Positions 2,520-59,340 of a stretch of DNA of 64,000 bases are shown in pieces; within the stretch, counting starts at the first letter, position 1; each line of letters opens with the position of its first letter. The notes under the pieces are model-generated. The model had not been told where the DNA came from. It searched no databases and saw nothing but the letters and a program-made list of their open reading frames with translations. The translations under genes and the position numbers were made by a program. Source of the stretch: Octopus sinensis (lineage: Eukaryota). Where the stretch lies: contig NC_043006.1 in NCBI RefSeq assembly GCF_006345805.1, positions 19,902,001 through 19,966,000 of the forward strand, in the 5' to 3' direction.

Positions 2520-2844
2520 GTGTGAGTGGAGGGGCTATGCATGTAACTTACCCGCGAGACTTCACTACTACCCCAGTCATTAGCAAATGAAGACATAGAG
2601 CAAGACCTGTATAAGTAAATAAAAAACGACAGTGTTGTTATAACAGTATTACCCAGTGATGTCTTTACAATATCATTTGTGACGTATTTGGTAGTAATCT
2701 TTATTAAATAGTCAATTAAGAAAATATCAATTATTTTATTCACTGGTGTTTAAGATGCACTTTTGTATTTTAAAATAAATCAAAAAATGACATTGTGTCT
2801 TATGCAGTCATATTATGGATAGGAGACTAAGAATTGTAGCTTAA

Positions 2845-11881: not shown

Positions 11882-11917
11882 ATTGAAATATCAGTATAAG
11901 ATTTGAACACTTGACCT
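11882..11917 (-). CDS. 36-nt exon of the SAM-domain gene
   Basis: ttttgttctacttgctcag acceptor, gtaagt donor, phase 2-2, (E)GQVFKSYTDIS, in frame with 14792-15134. Confidence 0.65.
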
Positions 11918-12517: not shown

Positions 12518-12763
12518 ATGGCTATAGGAGAAGACACTTGCCCAAAGTGCCACGTGGTGGGACTGAACCTAGAACCATGTGGTTGGGAAGCAAACTTCTT
12601 ACTGCAGGAAGAATTTGGTGTGCATGTGAAAATAAAATATCAAAGAAGAAGCAAAAGACTGTACCATTAATCTGTTAATCCTATATAGACTTGACTTAAA
12701 ACTCATTCTTAAATGTCCCTTTTTAGCCTTAATTCCTTCTTTGAATTTTCTTCAACAGATACT
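12518..12763 (+). repeat. Inverted copy of 15130-15547 lacking the 15258-15437 insertion
   Basis: About 8 mismatches over ~245 bp; includes the exon 3' splice site. Confidence 0.93.
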
Positions 12764-12794
12764 ATGGTAATTAAAGGAATATGGTTCCCTCTCT

Positions 12795-12998
12795 CTCGTT
12801 CGGAGAGGCACTGAGCAGCTATACGCACACATACACACACGGCAGTAACTTCCGCCTACCGAATTCAATCACAAAGCTTCGGTCGGCTTGGGGCTATAGT
12901 GGAAGACACCTGGCCAAAGTGCCACGCAGTGGGACTGAACCCGAAACCATGTAGCTAGGAAGCAAGCTCCCTAACCACACGGCCATGCCCGCACCTAC
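12795..12998 (-). mobile_element. SINE-A-related 5' fragment
   Basis: tRNA-like head and GGGACTGAACCCG motif. Confidence 0.7.
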
Positions 12999-13386
12999 AA
13001 AAATGTATGCATATATGCGCAGCGCTATGCACGTGGCAAGTTTTCTACGGCCGGATGCCCTTCCTTATTTTACTAAATTCTTTGTTATATTTAAAATTAA
13101 TTGAAAGAACCACAGAGCATCTCAACAGGAATATGGTAATTAAAGGAATATGGTAATTAAAGGAATATGGTAATTAAAGGAATATGGTAATCAAAGGAAT
13201 ATGGTAATCAAAGGAATATGGTAATTAAAGGAATATGGTAATTAAAGGAATATGGTAATCAAAGGAATATGGTAATTAAAGGAATATGGTAATCAAAGGA
13301 ATATGGTAATCAAAGAATATGGTAATCAAGGAATATGGTAATCAAAGGAATATGGTAATCAAAGGAATATGGTAATTAAAGGAATA

Positions 13387-13658
13387 AGGCGGCGAGCTGG
13401 CAGAATCGTTAGCACGCCGGGCGAAATGCTTAGCGGTATTTCGTCTGTTGTTACGTTCTGAGTTCAAATTCCGCCGAGGTCGACTTTGCCCTTCATCCTT
13501 TCGGGGTCGATAAATTAAGTACCAGTTACGCACTGGGGTCTGGGCATGGACACATTGAAACTCTAACGTCTGGCAGCTGACTTGGCATCGACTTAATACC
13601 TATGTCTGTCCTTGTTTGTCCCCTCTGTGTTTAACCCCTTGTGGGTAATAGAGAAATA
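13387..13658 (+). mobile_element. SINE-B carrying a 48-bp CR1-derived insert
   Basis: Insert 13540-13587 is the reverse complement of 3746-3793. Confidence 0.93.
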
Positions 13659-13946
13659 GGTAATTAAAGGAATATGGTAATCAAAGGAATATGGTAATTA
13701 AAGGAATATGGTAATCAAAGGAATATGGTAATTAAAGGAATATGGTAATCAAAGGAATATGGTAATTAAAGGAATATGGTAATCAAAGGAATATGGTAAT
13801 CAAAGGAATATGGTAATTAAAGGAATATGGTAATCAAAGGAATATGGTAATTAAAGGAATATGGTAATTAAAGGAATATGGTAATTAAAGGAATATGGTA
13901 ATTAAAGGAATATGGTAATCAAAGGAATATGGTAATTAAAGGAATA

Positions 13947-14176
13947 AGGCAGCGAGCTGGCAAAACGTTAGCACGCCGGGCGAAATGCTTAGCGGTATTT
14001 CGTCTGCGTTACATTGTGAGTTCAAATTCCGCCGAGGTCGACTTTGCCCTTCATCCTTTCGGGGTCGATAAATTAAGTACCAGTTACGCACTGGGGTAGA
14101 TGTAATCGACTTAATACCTATGTCTGTCCTTGTTTGTCCCCTCTGTGTTTAGCCCCTTGTGGGTAATAGAGAAATA
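13947..14176 (+). mobile_element. SINE-B without the insert
   Basis: Same register in the array and same 3' variant tail as its neighbours. Confidence 0.93.
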
Positions 14177-14362
14177 GGTAATTAAAGGAATATGGTAATC
14201 AAAGGAATATGGTAATCAAAGGAATATGGTAATTAAAGGAATATGGTAATCAAAGGAATATGGTAATTAAAGGAATATGGTAATCAAAGGAATATGGTAA
14301 TTAAAGGAATATGGTAATTAAAGGAATATGGTAATCAAAGGAATATGGTAATTAAAGGAATA

Positions 14363-14634
14363 AGGCGGCGAGCTGGCAGAATCGTTAGCACGCCGGGCGA
14401 AATGCTTAGCGGTATTTCGTCTGTTGTTACGTTCTGAGTTCAAATTCCGCCGAGGTCGACTTTGCCTTTCATCCTTTCAGGGTCGATAAATTAAGTACCA
14501 GTTACGCACTGGGGTCTGGGCATGGACACATTGAAACTCTAATGTCTGTCAGCTGACTTGGCATCGACTTAATACCTATGTCTGTCCTTGTTTGTCCCCT
14601 CTGTGTTTAGCCCCTTGTGGGTAATAGAGAAATA
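14363..14634 (+). mobile_element. SINE-B carrying a 48-bp CR1-derived insert
   Basis: Near-identical to 13387-13658; insert at 14516-14563. Confidence 0.93.
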
Positions 14635-14791
14635 GGTAATTAAAGGAATATGGTAATCAAAGGAATATGGTAATCAAAGGAATATGGTAATTAAAGGAAT
14701 ATGGTAATCAAAGGAATATGGTAATTAAAGGAATATGGTAATTAAAGGGTTAAGGTCAGAAAGAAACAGAAGAGAAATGCCAATGACTTAC

Positions 14792-15134
14792 TCTGTAGTA
14801 ACTTCTCTTTCGTCGAGTGAGATATGACTTTGATGCATGCAACTGGTATCGTTGTCGTGGTTAGGCCACTCAAGATGCCTGTTGAAGGGTGATGAACATG
14901 ATGAAGATGTCGACATTGCTGATGGCGCATTGGGAGAAGTGGCTTCCACCAAATGCAAGTGTGTGTCCTTTGACTGTGCCACATGTACAGCAGCTAGGTA
15001 CTTCTCCCTCTCGGCATTTGAGGTAAATCTCTTCAAATCATCCTCCTTCACTTGTATTGAGTTGGGATTCAGCAGTTCATAAATAGAGGATAACAATAAT
15101 TCTCGATCTTCCAGAGAAATTTCCTTTAAAGTAT
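14792..15134 (-). CDS. 343-nt exon encoding the SAM domain C-terminal helix and a following region
   Basis: ttttcttctacag acceptor, GA|gtaagt donor, phase 1-2, DTLKEISLEDRELLLSSIYELLNP...EVTTE. Confidence 0.88.
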
Positions 15135-15257
15135 CTGTAGAAGAAAATTCAAAGAAGGAATTAAGGCTAAAAAGGGACATTTAAGAATGAGGTTTAAGTC
15201 AAGTCTATATATGATTAACAGGTTAATGGTACAGTCTTTTGCTTCTTCTTTGATATT

Positions 15258-15437
15258 TTATTTTCGGGTGCTTTTTACGCACGGAGTGGTTGGCGTTAGG
15301 AAGGGCATCCAGCCATAGAAACATTGCCAGATCAGACTGGGCCTGGTGCAGCCTTCTGGCTTCCTAGACCCCAGTTGACCCGTCCAACCCATGCTAGCAT
15401 GGAAAGCGGACACTAAACGATGATGATGATGATGATG
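15258..15437 (+). mobile_element. RTE-related element, 3' part
   Basis: GGTTGGCGTTAGGAAGGGCATCC and (GAT)n tail. Confidence 0.85.
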
Positions 15438-15454
15438 ACATGCACACCAAATTC

Positions 15455-15842
15455 TTCCTGCAGTAAGAAGTTTGCTTCCCAACCACATGGTTCCAGGTTC
15501 AGTCCCACTGTGTGGCACTTTGGGCAAGTGTCTTCTCCTATAGCCATGAGTTGACCAAAACCTTGTGAGTAAATTTGGTAGATAGAAACTGAAAGAAGCC
15601 CATCATATATGTGTGTGTGTGTATTTCTTTGTTTGTATATGTGTTCATCCCCCATCATTGCTTGATGAACAGCATAGGTGTGTTTACATATGTCCCCATA
15701 ACTTGGCAGTTTGGCAAAAGAGACTGACAAAATAAGCACCAGGCCTTACAGAAAATAATAAGTACAGAGGCTGATAAGTTTGACTAAAATTCTTCAAGAC
15801 AGTGTCCCATCATGCCTACACTCTAATGACTGAAACAAGCGA
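15455..15842 (+). mobile_element. SINE-A, degenerate
   Basis: Family match. Confidence 0.85.
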
Positions 15843-19052: not shown

Positions 19053-19285
19053 TATTTCTTTACTACCCACAAGGGGCTAAACACAGAGGGGACAAACAAG
19101 GACAGACAAACGGATTAAGTCGATTACATCGACCTCAGTGCGTAACTGGTACTTAATTTATCGACCCCGAAAGGATGAAAGGCAAAGTCGACCTCGACGG
19201 AATTTGAACTCAGAACGTAACGGCAGACAAAATACGGCTACGCATTTCGCCCGGCGTGCTAACGTTTCTGCCAGCACGCCGCCTT
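19053..19285 (-). mobile_element. SINE-B
   Basis: Full-length; ACTTATTAGAA on both flanks. Confidence 0.93.
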
Positions 19286-19597
19286 ACTTATTAGAAATAT
19301 AGTAATGACAGAGTAAGCAAACTGGTAATTGTCCAAAAATATACAAACTAACTTTCCAGGCTCTCTGAACTGTTAAGCACGTTTGTATATGCACGAGGCA
19401 GAAAAACTGGCAGAATCATAAGAGCGCCAGACAGAATATATCTTGTAGTATTTTTACTCTCATTCTCTGTACTCTGGGTTCAAATTATCATTCAAGGCAA
19501 CCTTGTCTCAATGGAAAGCTTGGAAAAGTGGACTTTAAAGAATGATGATGATGATGATGATACACACACACAAAAAAATATATACATTTAAAAGAGG

Positions 19598-30819: not shown

Positions 30820-30870
30820 CAAGAAAATGTAAGTTTCCTTCCACCAAAGTGGTCCCTGTAACTTGGTTCT
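30820..30870 (-). CDS. 51-nt exon encoding the middle of the SAM domain
   Basis: tttatcttttatgtttcag acceptor, G|gtaata donor, phase 1-1, (E)NQVTGTTLVEGNLHFL(D). Confidence 0.85.
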
Positions 30871-32227: not shown

Positions 32228-33517
32228 CGAGGAGCGTTCAATAAGTAATGCCTCTGACCCACTTGCAGTTGTTTGATCTAGCTGAAAATTTACATGTGCA
32301 ATTATGTATATCTCTATAGATTAAGTGGCAAATTACAGCTCTGAACTAATTGTGGTTTCTGATATACAGGTGTTTGAACTGAGTCAAGTGTGAAATGGAG
32401 CCTGTTGAGTGTCGAGCAGTGATCCGGTTTTTGTATTTGAAAGGACGCACACCACGGGAGACTTTTGATGAAATGAAAGTAACTTATGGTGATGATGCCC
32501 CATCATATGACCTTGTAAAACGCTGGCATCGTGAATTCAAACATGGTTGGAACTCTGTGGAAACAGCTCCCAGATCTGGTCACCCCCCCTTCTGCCATTG
32601 ATGAGGCATCTGTCCGTCAAGTTGAGGCTGCCATTTTGGAAGATCGACGCATAACTATTCGCCAAATAGCCCATGAGGTCAAGTTTAGTACCGGGTCTGT
32701 GGAAACTATCATTCATTACCATTTGCATATGCAAAAGGTGTCTGCAAGATGGATTCCCAGGTTGCTCACACCTTTCCAGAAGCAAGAACGCATCGAGTGC
32801 TCGAGGATGAATTTGGAGATGTGCCAAGAAGATGAGTCAAAATTTTTCAAAAGACTGATTACACAGGATGAAACCTGGGTCCATCACTATGATCCAGAGA
32901 CCAAAGCCCAGTCAATGCAGTGGAAGCACCGTGACTCACCTCCTCCAAAGAAGGCAAAGGTGCAGCCCTCCGCTGGCAAGTCATGCTCACAGTCTTCTGG
33001 GACCAGGACGGAGTAGTGATGACAGATTTCCTGGCAAAGGGTACCACAATTACAGGAGCCTATTATGCTTCACTTTTGAGGAAATTAAGAGAAGCTATCA
33101 AAATCAAGAGGCGGGGCAAGATCACACAAGGCATCCTCCTCCTGCAGGACAACGCTCCGTCTACAACTCGCGTGTCGCCAGATCAGAAGCACAGGCATGC
33201 GGCTATGAACTCCTCCCCCATCCCCCTACTCTCCTGACCTTGCACCCTCTGATTTTCACCTCTTCCCAGCCATGAAGTTGTTTTTGAAAGGAAAGCGTTT
33301 CCCAGATGATGCAGCCTTGATTTCTGAAGTCACGTCATGGTTGGAGGACCAAGCTGGGGTTTTCTACAAAAACGGTCTCCAGAGTTGCATCAAACGATGG
33401 GAGAAATGTGTAACTCTGAGTGGTTCCTATGTAGAAAAAGACTAATAACTGTGCCAAGTTTCGTTGTTCTACTGCAATGGGAAGTGGGTCAGGGGCATTA
33501 CTATTGAACGCCCCTCG
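32228..33517 (+). mobile_element. Full-length mariner transposon (1290 bp)
   Basis: TA|CGAGGAGCGTTCAATAAGTAATGCC...GGCATTACTATTGAACGCCCCTCG|TA. Confidence 0.97.
32395..33447 (+). pseudogene. Mariner DD34D transposase, frameshifted
   Basis: WIPRLL, TQDETW, QDNA and YSPDLAPSDFHLF motifs spread over several frames. Confidence 0.95.
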
Positions 33518-48965: not shown

Positions 48966-49197
48966 AGCGCCTAACATTTGAATTTTCAACTGTTAGCATA
49001 CAACAGATCCTCATCCAGACCTGCTCTCAATGCTGGATGTTCAAGAACCAAATGAAGGGCAGATTTTCAATCCAGGGATCATCCTGAATCCAGAAACATA
49101 TAATATGTCTATGAGAAGCAAGATACAGGAGTCTTGGATGGATGGACAGACAGAATTTCACATTTATTATTATAGAAGATTAAAACTATATATCATT

Positions 49198-49371
49198 ATA
49201 GGCGTAGGAGTGGCTGTGTGGTAAGTAGCTTGTTTACCAACCACATGGTTCCAGGTTCAGTCCCACTGCATGGCACCTTGGGCAAGTGTCTTCTACTATA
49301 GCCTCGCGCCGACCAAAGCCTTGTGAGTGGATTTGGTAGACGGAAACTGAAAGAAGCCTGTTGTATATATG

Positions 49372-49408
<37 letters not shown>

Positions 49409-49613
49409 TTGTGTGTTTGTCCCCCTAGCATTGCTTGACAACCGATGCTGGTGTATTTATGTCCCCGTTACTTAGCGGTTCGGCAAAAGAGACCGATAGA
49501 ATAAGTACTGGGCTTACAAAGAATAAGTCCCGGGGTCGATTTGCTCGATTAAAGGCGGTGCTCCAGCATGGCAGCAGTCAAATGACTGAAACAAGTAAAA
49601 GAGTAAAAGAGTA
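49198..49613 (+). mobile_element. SINE-A
   Basis: Full-length family match. Confidence 0.93.
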
Positions 49614-49879
49614 TCATATATTCAGATCTTGTTAAAGCAATTGTGTTGTTGTGTGGACAAAAGTATTTAACACACTACATTTTCTAAGTTTTCTGGTTGA
49701 ACAAAACTTAGGCTCCATTTGTTACTGCATGTTTGAAAAGTTAGCAATAAAAATGCAAAATTTATTGCTTTCACAAGTAAACTATCTCACATTGAATAAT
49801 GAATGGATAACTGCAAAATGAAACAGTGCCACATATTTGATAATGAATGGATGGTTGCAAAAATTAAACTGTCCCATAT

Positions 49880-51191: not shown

Positions 51192-51273
51192 CATTAAATA
51201 TCACAGCAAACTGTTTTGCCAAGCCCTGTTGGTCTAGCCATCGAACTACATCAGCTGTGCTCCATTTTTTTAA
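51192..51273 (-). CDS. 82-nt exon encoding the SAM domain N-terminal half
   Basis: ttttttgtgtattttcag acceptor, G|gttagt donor, phase 0-1, LKKWSTADVVRWLDQQGLAKQFAVIFN fits the SAM W..EDV..WL...GL..Y...F pattern. Confidence 0.9.
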
Positions 51274-51416
51274 CTGAAAATACACAAAAAACATTCAAGG
51301 GTAAAAATTAAGCAAGCTACTTCATCTTACTTCTTATGGATAAATATTTATTTGATCACAAAACTTTCAATAAATAAATTTTTGTAAGCATTTGAAGATA
51401 TTCAAAAATTGTTAGT

Positions 51417-51504: not shown

Positions 51505-51584
51505 TGGCTACCTCTCAGATTTACTTTTTTAAAGTGATATCCTTTTGATCTTTTTGTAAAATTTTAATAAATCTTTCTAGCATT

Positions 51585-51870
51585 ATCATCATCATCATCA
51601 TCATCGTTTAGCGTCCGCTTTCCATGCTAGCATGGGTTGGACGGTTGAACTGGGGTCTGGGAAGCCAGAAGGCTGCACCAGGCCCAGTCTGATCTGGCAA
51701 TGTTTCTATAGCTGGATGCCCTTCCTAACGCCAACCACTCCGTGAGTGTAGTGGGAGCTTTTTACATGCCACCGGCATAGGTCCCAGACGAGGCTGGCAA
51801 ACGGCCATGATCGGATGGTGCTTTTTATGTGCCACTGGCACAGAGGCCAGGCGAGGCTGGCAATGGCCAT
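51585..51870 (-). mobile_element. RTE-related element
   Basis: (CAT)n tail and family motifs. Confidence 0.88.
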
Positions 51871-51961
51871 TATGGTTCTAAATATTTAATGTATTTTTTT
51901 TTAATGACAAAATTTCATTTTTATTTTTAAAAAAGTAGAAAGAGATATGAGGAATGATTAC

Positions 51962-52017
51962 CTCTTGTGGTAAACTTTTATAATTTTCATTTAGGAATTG
52001 AACAGGTACATCGGAAG
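51962..52017 (-). CDS. 56-nt exon preceding the SAM domain
   Basis: tttttgtgttctttcag acceptor, GAG|gtaatc donor, phase 1-0, (A)SDVPVQFLNENYKSLPQE. Confidence 0.82.
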
Positions 52018-52494
52018 CTGAAAGAACACAAAAACGTATATTAATATATACTTAGAAGTGGATGCGTGCGTTCTATTATATAATAACAAAATAATAAATA
52101 GAACATAAGCATATATACATACATATATGTACGTACCTACATCTATATGTATATATACATGCATATATGGGTAACGCAGAGTAGATGAAACAGAGGCAGC
52201 TGAAGAAGGGGAATGTTCCTTGTGTTGTATGTCTTGTACTCTATTTTTTCATTGTTTAAGAAAAATGTCCATTTCCTTGGTTTTGTGTTTATGTTTTCGT
52301 TTTTCATTGTGTTCGACATTTTTTTTTTTTGGATTATGCATGTATATATATATATACATATAGACAGTCTGTGCATCAGGATTATTAAGGCTGTCCCACT
52401 GAAGAAAACTTGCCTTCGGCAAATATATTTTTTTTTGCTGGAAATAGTTAGAAACCATCGGTCTGGGATATAGTTGAGATGGTAAATGTTTTTA

Positions 52495-54281: not shown

Positions 54282-54539
54282 ACTACCAAGCATAAATCAA
54301 GTCATCTTTCTTTTGCCAAAACCTATGTGAGTGAATGGAAGGTGTTTTGGAATAAAGTTCTTTTTCCTGACAAGACTAATATCAACTTATTTGGGTCAGA
54401 TGTTATTTAACAAGTATGGCGACAACCAGGTGAAGATAATAGTGACAAATGCACCGTAACTACCATGAAATTTTTTAGGGGTATACATACTTCAGTGAGA
54501 TACTGTATATATATATATTATATATATATATATATATTC

Positions 54540-54938
54540 TCGTTTACTCTTTTACTTGTTTCAGTCATTTGACTGCGGCCATGCTGGAGCACCGCCTTTA
54601 GTCGAGCAAATCGACCCCGGGACTTATTCTTTGTAAGCCCAGTACTTATTCTGTCGGTCTCTTTTTGCCAAACCGCTAAGTGACAGGGACGTAAACACAC
54701 CAGCATCGGTTGTCAAGCAATGCTAGGGGGACAAACACAGACACACAAACACACACACATATATATATATACATACGACAGGCTTCTTTCAGTTTCCGTC
54801 TACCAAATCCACTCACAAGGCATTGGTCGGCCCGGGGCTATAGCAGAAGACACTTGCCCAAGATGCCACACAGTGGGACTGAACCCGGAACCATGTGGTT
54901 GGTTAGCAAGCTACTTACCACACAGCCACTCCTGCGCC
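54540..54938 (-). mobile_element. SINE-A
   Basis: Full-length family match. Confidence 0.93.
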
Positions 54939-54949
54939 TATATATATAT

Positions 54950-55531
54950 AAAATCAAAATCAAAAATCAAACCAAATCAAAATAGATGAACATCAATGGA
55001 ATTTGTATCTTTGTGGTACCAGTGCCGGTGGCACACAAGAAAACCATCCGAACGTGGCCGTAGCCAGTACCACATCGACTGGCCTCCGTGCTGTGGGCAC
55101 GTAACAAACACCATCCGATCGTGGCCGTTCGCCAGCCTCATCTGGCACTTGTGTCGGTGGCACATAAAAACACCATCCGAGCGTGGCCGTCTGCCAGCCT
55201 CGTCTGGCACCTGTGTCGGTGGCACATAAAAACACCATCCGAGCGTGGCCGTCTGCCAGCCTCGTCTGGCACCTGTGTCGGTGGCACATAAAAAACACCA
55301 TCCGAGCGTGGCCGTTCGCCAGCCTCGTCTGGCACCTGTGTCGGTGGCACATAAAATCACCCACTACACTCTCGGAGTGGTTGGCGTTAGGAAGGGCATC
55401 CAGCTGTAGAAACACTGCCAGATCTGACTGGCCTGGTGCAGCCTTCGGGCTCCCCAGACTCCAGTTGAACCGTCCAACCCATGCTAGCATGGAAAGCGGA
55501 CGTTAAATGATGATGATGATGATGATGATGA
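54950..55531 (+). mobile_element. RTE-related element with a young ~57-bp internal tandem array
   Basis: Near-identical CACCATCCGAGCGTGGCCGT..GGCACATAAAAA units; (GAT)n tail. Confidence 0.9.
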
Positions 55532-55547
55532 TATATATATATATATA

Positions 55548-59100: not shown

Positions 59101-59176
59101 ACAACTGTGTGTGTGTGTGTAAAAACAAATAATGTTTTCTATATTCTTAACTAACAAAAATAGTAAAGAAACCTAC

Positions 59177-59340
59177 CAGCAGATGGATGGGCAAAAGACT
59201 GGCTTCCATAGTTAGAGGGTTCATCCAGTACACTGGAGACTGTTTTCAGGGTTAGCTTCTTTTTGGGTGTGTATCCTTGTTGTTCCCATCGTTGCATCGG
59301 GGTAAACAACTGCTTACTCACAAAGACAGGGGCCAATATA
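59177..59340 (-). CDS. 164-nt exon, most upstream exon found
   Basis: cttctttttcgtcttccag acceptor, G|gtaggt donor, phase 2-1, ILAPVFVSKQLFTPMQRWEQQG...FAHPSA; joins 52017 in frame. Confidence 0.7.

What the first reader, a model, noticed from the sequence alone, without database searches (positions are those of the whole stretch)
12518..15547. Inverted copy positioned to bury the 3' splice site of the 343-nt exon in dsRNA
Seen: the intron downstream of exon 14792-15134 carries a reverse-complement copy of the intron end upstream of it. The proximal ~135 nt (4 mismatches) cover the likely branch region, the pyrimidine tract, the AG and the first exon bases. Inference: in the pre-mRNA the two copies can pair across ~2.4 kb, loop out the exon and mask its acceptor. 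The exon is not a multiple of 3 and ends the SAM domain, so skipping would frameshift. Established: coleoid cephalopods have extensive ADAR editing, and A-to-I at an acceptor AG abolishes it. This could be a repeat-built splicing or editing switch, or promote circularisation.
Basis: partly seen in the sequence, partly recalled or inferred. Interest (0 to 1): 0.8.

Follow-up and report, generated by a model that had tools for sequence, protein, structure and literature searches.

The report
Inverted copy of an octopus splice acceptor
In an octopus gene for a SAM-PDZ scaffold protein, 246 bases spanning the acceptor splice site of one exon were copied upside-down into the next intron, so the pre-mRNA could bury that splice site in double-stranded RNA; nothing available here shows that this does more than the many other inverted repeats in the same gene.

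Summary
Window 12518-12763 is a reverse-complement copy of 15130-15547. It has two blocks, 136 nt and 110 nt, each with 4 mismatches and no indels. A 172-nt SINE sits only in the exon-side copy.

The proximal block is single-copy sequence. It covers the first 5 exon bases, the acceptor AG, the pyrimidine tract and the likely branch region of a 343-nt minus-strand exon. This is exon 5 of the Octopus sinensis LOC115216697 / O. bimaculoides LOC106871175 orthologue.

The copy at 12518-12763 is the derived one. It is truncated at both ends and abuts a 17-mer minisatellite. It predates the SINE insertion, so it is not an assembly artefact. Predicted pairing is very strong, and it appears in the minimum-energy fold of 3.6 kb of pre-mRNA.

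The functional reading is unproven:
- All 12 protein models from five cephalopods include the exon.
- The next exon is at 2552-2606, not 11917.
- Argonauta lacks the copy.
- The window holds 45 other inverted pairs.
- Published octopus data report that editing very rarely alters splice sites and that circRNA levels are low.

Most likely this is a lineage-specific, largely neutral inverted duplication. It is a good but ordinary candidate for repeat-mediated exon skipping or hyper-editing.

The parts
15130..15265 (-). Arm B, proximal block (the original): first 5 nt of exon 5 (15130-15134), acceptor AG (15135-15136), pyrimidine tract and likely branch region at the end of intron 4
   Evidence: Single-copy apart from arm A. 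GC 29%. Weak self-structure on its own (-13.8 kcal/mol).
15266..15437 (+). 172-nt SINE with a (GAT)n tail, inserted into arm B after the duplication. Its first 14 nt are an inverted piece of the element's own 5' region, which resembles twin priming.
   Evidence: aligns with 5 other copies, and arm A keeps the uninterrupted empty site; 96% identical to the copy at 51586-51747.
15438..15547 (-). Arm B, distal block: 25 nt of unique intron plus the terminal ~83 nt of a full SINE1 copy that continues to about 15839
12628..12763 (-). Arm A, proximal block: derived inverted copy of the acceptor region. In the pre-mRNA it is antisense to the acceptor.
   Evidence: Four mismatches (12671, 12681, 12701, 12754). 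Homology ends 5 nt into the exon sequence.
12518..12627 (-). Arm A, distal block: copy of 15438-15547, truncated in the middle of SINE1
   Evidence: It shares private variants with arm B relative to the other SINE1 copies. The left flank has no SINE1 homology.
14792..15134 (-). Exon 5 (343 nt): residues 104-218 of the orthologous protein, including the end of the SAM domain
12764..14748 (.). 17-mer minisatellite (GGTAATTAAAGGAATAT, 48 units within 2 mismatches of the consensus) between arm A and the exon's donor. It carries three embedded SINE copies in a higher-order repeat and a 336-nt insertion (12785-13120) flanked by GGAATATGG. It ends 43 nt from the donor.
   Evidence: The 17-mer occurs nowhere else in the window.
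30820..30870 (-). Exon 4 (51 nt), upstream neighbour
2552..2606 (-). Exon 6 (55 nt), the true downstream neighbour. Intron 5 is therefore 12.2 kb.
19053..19286 (.). SINE copy in intron 4 that is inverted relative to three copies inside the minisatellite (best 13945-14176, 92% over 234 nt). This is a second inverted pair flanking exon 5.

Best explanation
This is a real, lineage-specific inverted segmental duplication inside an octopus gene.

Origin. The last 241 nt of intron 4 (as it was before a later SINE insertion) plus the first 5 nt of exon 5 were copied in reverse orientation into intron 5, next to a 17-mer minisatellite. The mechanism was probably a replication template switch or break repair; this is inferred. 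Afterwards a SINE landed in the original, both copies accumulated 8 substitutions, and the minisatellite between them expanded.

Consequence. In the pre-mRNA the two copies can form a 136-bp plus 110-bp duplex. That duplex contains the branch region, pyrimidine tract and AG of exon 5 and loops the exon out.

Most likely outcome. The same thing happens as with the many other inverted intronic repeats of this gene. When the duplex forms it is hyper-edited and unwound by ADAR. In a minority of transcripts it may cause frameshifting skipping (exon 4 joined to exon 6), with the product plausibly lost to nonsense-mediated decay, or some circular RNA. The exon remains essentially constitutive, because its acceptor is made and committed before the partner arm is transcribed.

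In short, it is a tolerated by-product of repeat-driven intron evolution, not a dedicated switch.

Shown: the anatomy, the direction and relative age of the copy, and the pairing potential. Inferred: everything about RNA-level outcome.
For: Anatomy and uniqueness.

Arm A is the derived copy:
- The exon boundary is conserved in three cephalopod lineages.
- Arm A stops 5 nt into the exon and in the middle of SINE1.
- It shares private SINE1 variants with arm B.

It is real and not recent:
- Arm A keeps the empty site of a SINE insertion present in arm B.
- There are 8 substitutions and no indels.
- The window contains no N.

Pairing potential.

Evidence for ordinariness:
- 45 inverted pairs of at least 80 nt lie within 5 kb of each other in this window. 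Many are about 400 nt at 90-94% identity, and some flank exons 2-3.
- A second pair flanks exon 5.
- All 12 protein models include exon 5.
- There is no counterpart in Argonauta.
- The pyrimidine tract is good (83% Y) and the donor is GUAAGU.
- Octopus has the highest genomic potential for long dsRNA and the strongest hyper-editing among the species surveyed (PMC5625713).
- In octopus, editing rarely alters splice sites and circRNAs are low (PMC9699675).
Against: - The duplex sits directly on the 3' splice site. In the RABL5 minigene, dsRNA-forming Alus affected splicing only when closer than about 68 nt to the exon (PMC2533698). If this duplex forms, an effect is therefore expected.
- It is the most identical inverted pair in the window (97%).
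- A frameshifted product, if degraded by nonsense-mediated decay, would be invisible in protein models, so constitutive annotation is weak evidence.
- No RNA-seq, population or close-relative genomic data could be examined.
Confidence: 0.6

Rival explanations
1. Regulated splicing or editing switch. Pairing of the two copies masks the acceptor, or lets ADAR convert the acceptor AG to IG. Exon 5 is then skipped, the frame shifts, and gene output is tuned, for example by temperature or ADAR level.
For: - The duplex covers the branch region, pyrimidine tract and AG. The acceptor A is in a perfect A-U pair near the helix end.
- Energy is very favourable.
- Skipping shifts the frame.
- About 500 human editing sites in 3' acceptor sequences alter splicing (PMC5991522).
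- Proximity of dsRNA to the 3' splice site matters (PMC2533698).
Against: - No isoform lacking exon 5 appears among 12 models.
- The copy is not present in Argonauta.
- The partner arm is transcribed about 2.4 kb after a well-defined exon.
- Octopus-wide, editing very rarely alters splice sites (PMC9699675).
- The 5' neighbour of the acceptor A is C, which is not a favoured ADAR context (general knowledge).
- The gene is full of similar inverted pairs with no sign of consequence.
Confidence: 0.1
2. circRNA driver. The flanking complementary sequences bring the donor (14792) and acceptor (15134) of exon 5 together and promote a 343-nt circular RNA.
For: Inverted complementary sequences flank a single exon within 2.4 kb. 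This is the known architecture for back-splicing (reviewed in PMC5168830; PMC13019027 links circRNA and loop-out skipping).
Against: - The acceptor itself lies inside the helix, so it would be hidden from U2AF/U2 for back-splicing too.
- circRNAs are at overall low levels in octopus, consistent with repression by ADAR (PMC9699675).
Confidence: 0.08
3. Assembly artefact: a chimeric or fold-back read, or a haplotype copy inserted upside-down.
For: The copy lies next to a 2-kb minisatellite with 96-98% identical higher-order units, which is a region hard to assemble. No independent reads or assemblies could be fetched.
Against: - The arms differ by 8 substitutions and no indels. In the adjacent 3-nt mismatch, both copies differ from the one other SINE1 copy read at that site (12892-12973).
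- One arm carries a 172-nt SINE insertion that the other lacks.
- The interior is not palindromic, so this is not a fold-back.
- There are no gaps.
Confidence: 0.04
4. Two independent insertions of one transposable element in opposite orientations, or terminal inverted repeats of a DNA transposon carrying the exon.
For: 83 nt of each arm are SINE1 sequence.
Against: - The other 161 nt are single-copy and include the ancestral acceptor and 5 exon bases, at a boundary conserved in other cephalopods.
- The outer end of arm B is not an element terminus, because SINE1 continues there.
- There are no target-site duplications outside the arms (read directly).
- The SINE1 parts share private variants.
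Confidence: 0.02

Closest known systems
Inverted Alu pairs causing loop-out exon skipping (TBXT AluY/AluSx1; RABL5; genome-wide survey in PMC13019027, PMC2533698)
   Same: Reverse-complementary sequences lie in the two introns flanking one exon, within 5 kb. The predicted stem is very stable and loops the exon out. Skipping is the expected outcome.
   Different: - The critical arm here is not a transposon pair. It is a segmental copy of the exon's own acceptor region, so the helix includes the splice signals themselves rather than lying beside them.
- The host is an octopus.
- No skipping has been observed.
- The exon is long (343 nt) with good splice sites, whereas Alu-prone exons tend to be short with weak acceptors (PMC13019027; abstract, results section).
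Flanking intronic complementary sequences that promote exon circularisation (inverted Alus; the inverted repeats around mouse Sry, the latter from general knowledge)
   Same: Inverted repeats bracket a single exon. The Sry case is also a non-transposon genomic duplication.
   Different: In known cases the splice sites stay outside the paired region. Here the acceptor is inside it. No back-splice evidence is available.
ADAR editing at 3' acceptor sites and structure-dependent exons (PMC5991522; ADAR-deficiency splicing changes in PMC7462079; ADAR2 self-editing, from general knowledge)
   Same: Intronic dsRNA overlaps a 3' splice site, so that A-to-I at the -2 position (AG to IG) could abolish it.
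   Different: Editing here is hypothetical. Known site-specific editing structures are usually conserved. This one is absent from Argonauta, and its status in close relatives is unknown.
Splice-site sequestration by RNA secondary structure and conserved long-range base pairing (PMC8052449; reviews PMC7404189, PMC9198270)
   Same: A distant complementary box pairs with splice signals.
   Different: Those boxes are typically 10-30 nt and evolutionarily conserved with covariation. This one is 246 nt, young (3.3% diverged) and lineage-specific.

Membership tests
Inverted-repeat loop-out exon-skipping element | Reverse-complementary sequences in the upstream and downstream introns of one exon, within a few kb | tested here: met
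   arms 0 nt upstream and 2029 nt downstream of exon 5
Inverted-repeat loop-out exon-skipping element | Predicted stable intramolecular stem | tested here: met
   -201.5 and -214.8 kcal/mol; present in the MFE of 3.6 kb
Inverted-repeat loop-out exon-skipping element | The enclosed exon is actually skipped in some transcripts | not testable with these tools
   No RNA-seq is accessible. 12 of 12 protein models include the exon, which is only weak negative evidence.
Inverted-repeat loop-out exon-skipping element | Arms are copies of an interspersed repeat | tested here: not met
   The proximal 161 nt are single-copy; only the distal 83 nt are SINE1.
circRNA-promoting flanking complementary sequences | Back-splice junction joining the exon's donor to its own acceptor | not testable with these tools
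   No RNA data are available.
circRNA-promoting flanking complementary sequences | Splice sites left accessible outside the paired region | tested here: not met
   The acceptor AG, pyrimidine tract and likely branch region are all paired in the predicted structure.
Conserved editing-complementary or long-range regulatory RNA structure | Conservation of both boxes, ideally with compensatory changes, across species | tested here: inconclusive
   Absent in Argonauta hians, and not seen in the 613 nt available from a third species. O. bimaculoides and O. vulgaris loci could not be fetched.
Conserved editing-complementary or long-range regulatory RNA structure | Observed A-to-I editing in the arms | not testable with these tools
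   No RNA data are available.
Assembly fold-back or false duplication | Identical arms, a palindromic junction or adjacency to gaps | tested here: not met
   3.3% substitutions, a SINE present in one arm only, a non-palindromic interior, and no N.
Transposon terminal inverted repeats | Arms end at element termini and are flanked by target-site duplications; multiple genomic copies | tested here: not met
   Arm B's ends fall inside a conserved exon and inside a continuing SINE1. There is no TSD, and the sequence has only two copies in 64 kb.

The most novel reading that the evidence does not exclude
A non-transposon, self-derived antisense copy of a 3' splice site acts as a lineage-specific switch sensitive to ADAR or temperature. 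When the 246-bp duplex forms, or its acceptor AG is edited, exon 5 is skipped and the frame shifts, so a neuronal SAM-PDZ scaffold is down-tuned. This would be an example of cephalopod RNA editing regulating splicing through a structure built by segmental duplication.
Probability: 0.07. Interest if true: 0.65.

Novelty: new member of a known kind. Interest (0 to 1): 0.3.

Why it matters
If the pairing affects splicing, this would be a clean natural experiment. A single dated duplication places a perfect antisense partner on a splice acceptor, in an animal with extreme ADAR activity, and the consequence (frameshift) is easy to read out. It would extend inverted-Alu loop-out skipping from primates to molluscs, and from transposon pairs to self-copies of splice sites. 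If it does nothing, that shows how robust co-transcriptional exon definition is against a duplex of about -470 kcal/mol formed 2.4 kb later.

Tried and rejected
1. Independent confirmation or close-relative comparison.
- The exon-5 ORF and the arm-A junction ORF of the window are not on record.
- A homology search with the arm-A ORF found nothing.
- O. bimaculoides and O. vulgaris gene ranges (124 kb and 172 kb) are too long for DNA retrieval.
- Other isoforms and older models are not on record.

2. Argonauta hians locus (L003). It was retrieved, but its introns are unalignable. It shows only complementary (GAT)n/(ATC)n tracts around the exon, not a homologue of the arms.

3. Pfam on the exon peptide alone gave no SAM match. 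The SAM assignment came only from full-length orthologues.

4. Rfam and tRNA scans of the region found nothing.

5. Test of whether arm A was seeded by a pre-existing SINE1 copy (homology-primed conversion). This was rejected, because the left flank of arm A has no SINE1 similarity.

6. A fold-back palindrome, inversion with staggered breaks, and transposon terminal repeats were all considered and rejected on anatomy. The exon is contiguous with arm B and correctly oriented, the interior is not palindromic, and there are no target-site duplications.

7. Literature search for the gene identifiers, and the supplements of the octopus transcriptome paper, gave no mention.
Full report
**1. The observation**

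The repeat finder reports two collinear inverted blocks: 12628-12763 against 15130-15265 (136 nt, 97%) and 12518-12627 against 15438-15547 (110 nt, 96%). blastn of each arm against the whole window confirms them, with E = 2e-62 and 3e-48. All eight differences are substitutions and there are no indels.

Only 12520-12602 belongs to a dispersed repeat, here called SINE1. It has about 22 copies in the window at 75-90% identity. The remaining 161 nt (12603-12763) have exactly one other copy in 64 kb, which is the partner arm.

**2. The gene**

The gene lies on the minus strand. The exhaustive representative search with the exon peptide found O. bimaculoides XP_052826614.1 (LOC106871175) at 98% identity. 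A second search recovered O. sinensis LOC115216697 isoforms, O. vulgaris CAI9728347/8 (labelled 'X-box-binding protein 1' in the source record), Argonauta hians, and a transcript-derived protein from a further species. The window's exon-5 peptide is identical to the O. sinensis and O. vulgaris proteins.

tblastn places the exons as follows:

| Exon | Coordinates |
|---|---|
| 1 | 59175-59297 |
| 2 | 51959-52021 |
| 3 | 51193-51276 |
| 4 | 30820-30870 |
| 5 | 14792-15134 |
| 6 | 2552-2606 |

Pfam gives SAM_2 over residues 63-123 of the O. bimaculoides protein. This match is borderline there and above threshold in relatives. PDZ and a FIP-type C-terminal match appear in homologues. Exon 5 starts at residue 104, so it does encode the end of the SAM domain.

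Exon 5 is 343 nt. Joining exon 4 to exon 6 shifts the frame, giving ...NLHFLGLALCLHLLMTGVVVKSR.

All of them join exon 5 directly to exon 6. Intron 5 is therefore 12.2 kb, and the relevant skip junction is 30820|2606.

**3. Anatomy and history**

Arm B (15130-15547) is the original.
- The exon-5 acceptor position is conserved in Argonauta (L003) and in the species of P0001 (L001).
- Arm A stops 5 nt into the exon sequence at one end. At the other end it stops in the middle of SINE1, whereas arm B's SINE1 continues for another ~300 nt.
- The SINE1 parts of the two arms share variants not seen in the other copies.

Arm B is interrupted by a 172-nt SINE with a (GAT)n tail, and arm A preserves the uninterrupted site. 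The first 14 nt of that insert are the reverse complement of the family's own 5' region, which resembles twin priming.

The order of events is therefore: SINE1 insertion, then inverted duplication, then SINE insertion into the original. This order, together with 3.3% substitution-only divergence and the absence of gaps, argues strongly against an assembly artefact.

Arm A abuts a 17-mer minisatellite at 12764. The minisatellite fills the space up to 43 nt from the exon's donor and occurs nowhere else in the window. It contains three SINE copies in a higher-order repeat whose units are 96-98% identical. The distance between the arms has therefore probably grown since the duplication.

The 17-mer shares the 9-mer TTAAAGGAA with exon bases 6-14, immediately beyond the breakpoint. 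Such 9-mers occur 13 times on both strands elsewhere in the window. From that count I estimate a chance of roughly 0.2-0.4% for this placement. This hints at microhomology in the rearrangement, but the junction sequence does not fit a simple switch at that 9-mer. The mechanism remains unresolved.

**4. Pairing potential**

| Measure | Value |
|---|---|
| Duplex energy, proximal block | -201.5 kcal/mol |
| Duplex energy, distal block | -214.8 kcal/mol |
| Self-structure of the acceptor arm alone | -13.8 kcal/mol |
| Pairs formed in the MFE of 3.6 kb pre-mRNA (15900 to 12300), proximal | 132 of 136 |
| Pairs formed in the same MFE, distal | 107 of 110 |

Every base from exon +5 to -56 is paired except a U-U mismatch at -5 (15139). 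The acceptor A (15136) pairs with U (12757).

**5. Context that lowers the prior for a dedicated function**

- The window contains 45 inverted pairs of at least 80 nt within 5 kb. Many are full SINE1 pairs of about 400 nt at 90-94% identity, and some bracket exons 2-3.
- A second pair brackets exon 5 (19053-19286 against 13945-14176, 92% over 234 nt).
- Octopus has an exceptionally high genomic potential for long, nearly perfect dsRNA and one of the two strongest hyper-editing signals among the species surveyed. Such duplexes are described as being unwound by extensive editing (PMC5625713).
- Exon 5 has an 83% pyrimidine tract and a GUAAGU donor.
- The partner arm is transcribed about 2.4 kb after the acceptor, so the acceptor is likely to be committed before pairing can occur. 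This is inference.
- Argonauta has compact introns (about 2.6 kb and 4.3 kb) and no homologue of the arms.

**6. Context that keeps the idea alive**

- The helix lies on the splice signals themselves. In the RABL5 minigene, an effect of dsRNA-forming Alus required them to be within about 68 nt of the exon (PMC2533698).
- Loop-out skipping by inverted repeats is established (PMC13019027).
- About 500 human editing sites in 3' acceptor sequences alter splicing (PMC5991522).
- A frameshifted skip product, if lost to nonsense-mediated decay, would not appear in protein models.

**7. Verdict**

The structure is real. It is a neat, datable, self-derived inverted copy of a splice acceptor.

Mechanistically it belongs to a known kind: flanking inverted repeats that cause loop-out, circularisation or hyper-editing, and splice-site sequestration. 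Its unusual feature is that the arm is the splice site's own copy rather than a transposon.

Function is unproven and, on present evidence, most likely minor. Close-relative genomes and RNA data, which the tools could not reach, would settle it.

Noticed in passing
window 12764-14748: A 17-mer minisatellite (GGTAATTAAAGGAATAT, T/C variant at position 7) is confined to this intron. It has three embedded SINE copies forming a higher-order repeat (units 96-98% identical) and starts 43 nt downstream of the exon-5 donor. Its unit shares the 9-mer TTAAAGGAA with exon bases 6-14, right at the duplication breakpoint. About 48 tandem AU-rich motifs next to a 5' splice site could themselves bind splicing factors.
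   Followed up: partly
window 15266-15279: The SINE inserted in arm B begins with 14 nt that are the exact reverse complement of the family's own 5' region (CGTAAAAAGCACCC), with 8 nt deleted. This 5' inversion resembles twin priming, and no target-site duplication is evident.
   Followed up: partly
window 11882-11917 (minus strand): A 36-nt in-frame candidate micro-exon with a ttgctcag acceptor and a gtaagt donor would insert GQVFKSYTDISM between exons 5 and 6. It is absent from all 12 protein models. It could be an unannotated neural micro-exon or just chance.
   Followed up: partly
L003 8960-9050 and 9515-9590 (Argonauta hians): In Argonauta the orthologous exon is flanked by a (GAT)n tract ending about 50 nt upstream of the acceptor and an (ATC)n/(CTC)n tract about 70 nt downstream of the donor. 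These are complementary microsatellites that could also loop the exon out. They are not homologous to the Octopus arms.
   Followed up: partly
window 19053-19286 vs 13945-14176, 13385-13658, 14361-14634: A second inverted SINE pair (92% over 234 nt for the best copy) also brackets exon 5, so the exon sits inside nested potential loops.
   Followed up: no
window 12785-13120: A 336-nt insertion (part SINE1, part unique) lies in the first unit of the minisatellite, flanked by the direct repeat GGAATATGG. This is consistent with a target-site duplication and shows that the array predates this insertion.
   Followed up: no
window 32519-33442 (+): Stop-free stretches in two frames look like the remains of a DNA-transposon transposase, possibly mariner-like (judged from the sequence by eye only), with an apparent frameshift, inside intron 3.
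   Followed up: no
protein records: The O. vulgaris orthologues (CAI9728347.1, CAI9728348.1) are named 'X-box-binding protein 1'. The protein shows SAM, PDZ and FIP-type matches and no bZIP match in the Pfam scan of the homologues, so the name looks like an annotation error.
   Followed up: partly
window 49187-49621 vs 54530-54950, and 51582-51869 vs 55246-55532: Long inverted SINE pairs (289-436 nt, 89-90%) bracket exons 2 and 3 of the same gene. This illustrates how common exon-flanking inverted repeats are here.
   Followed up: no
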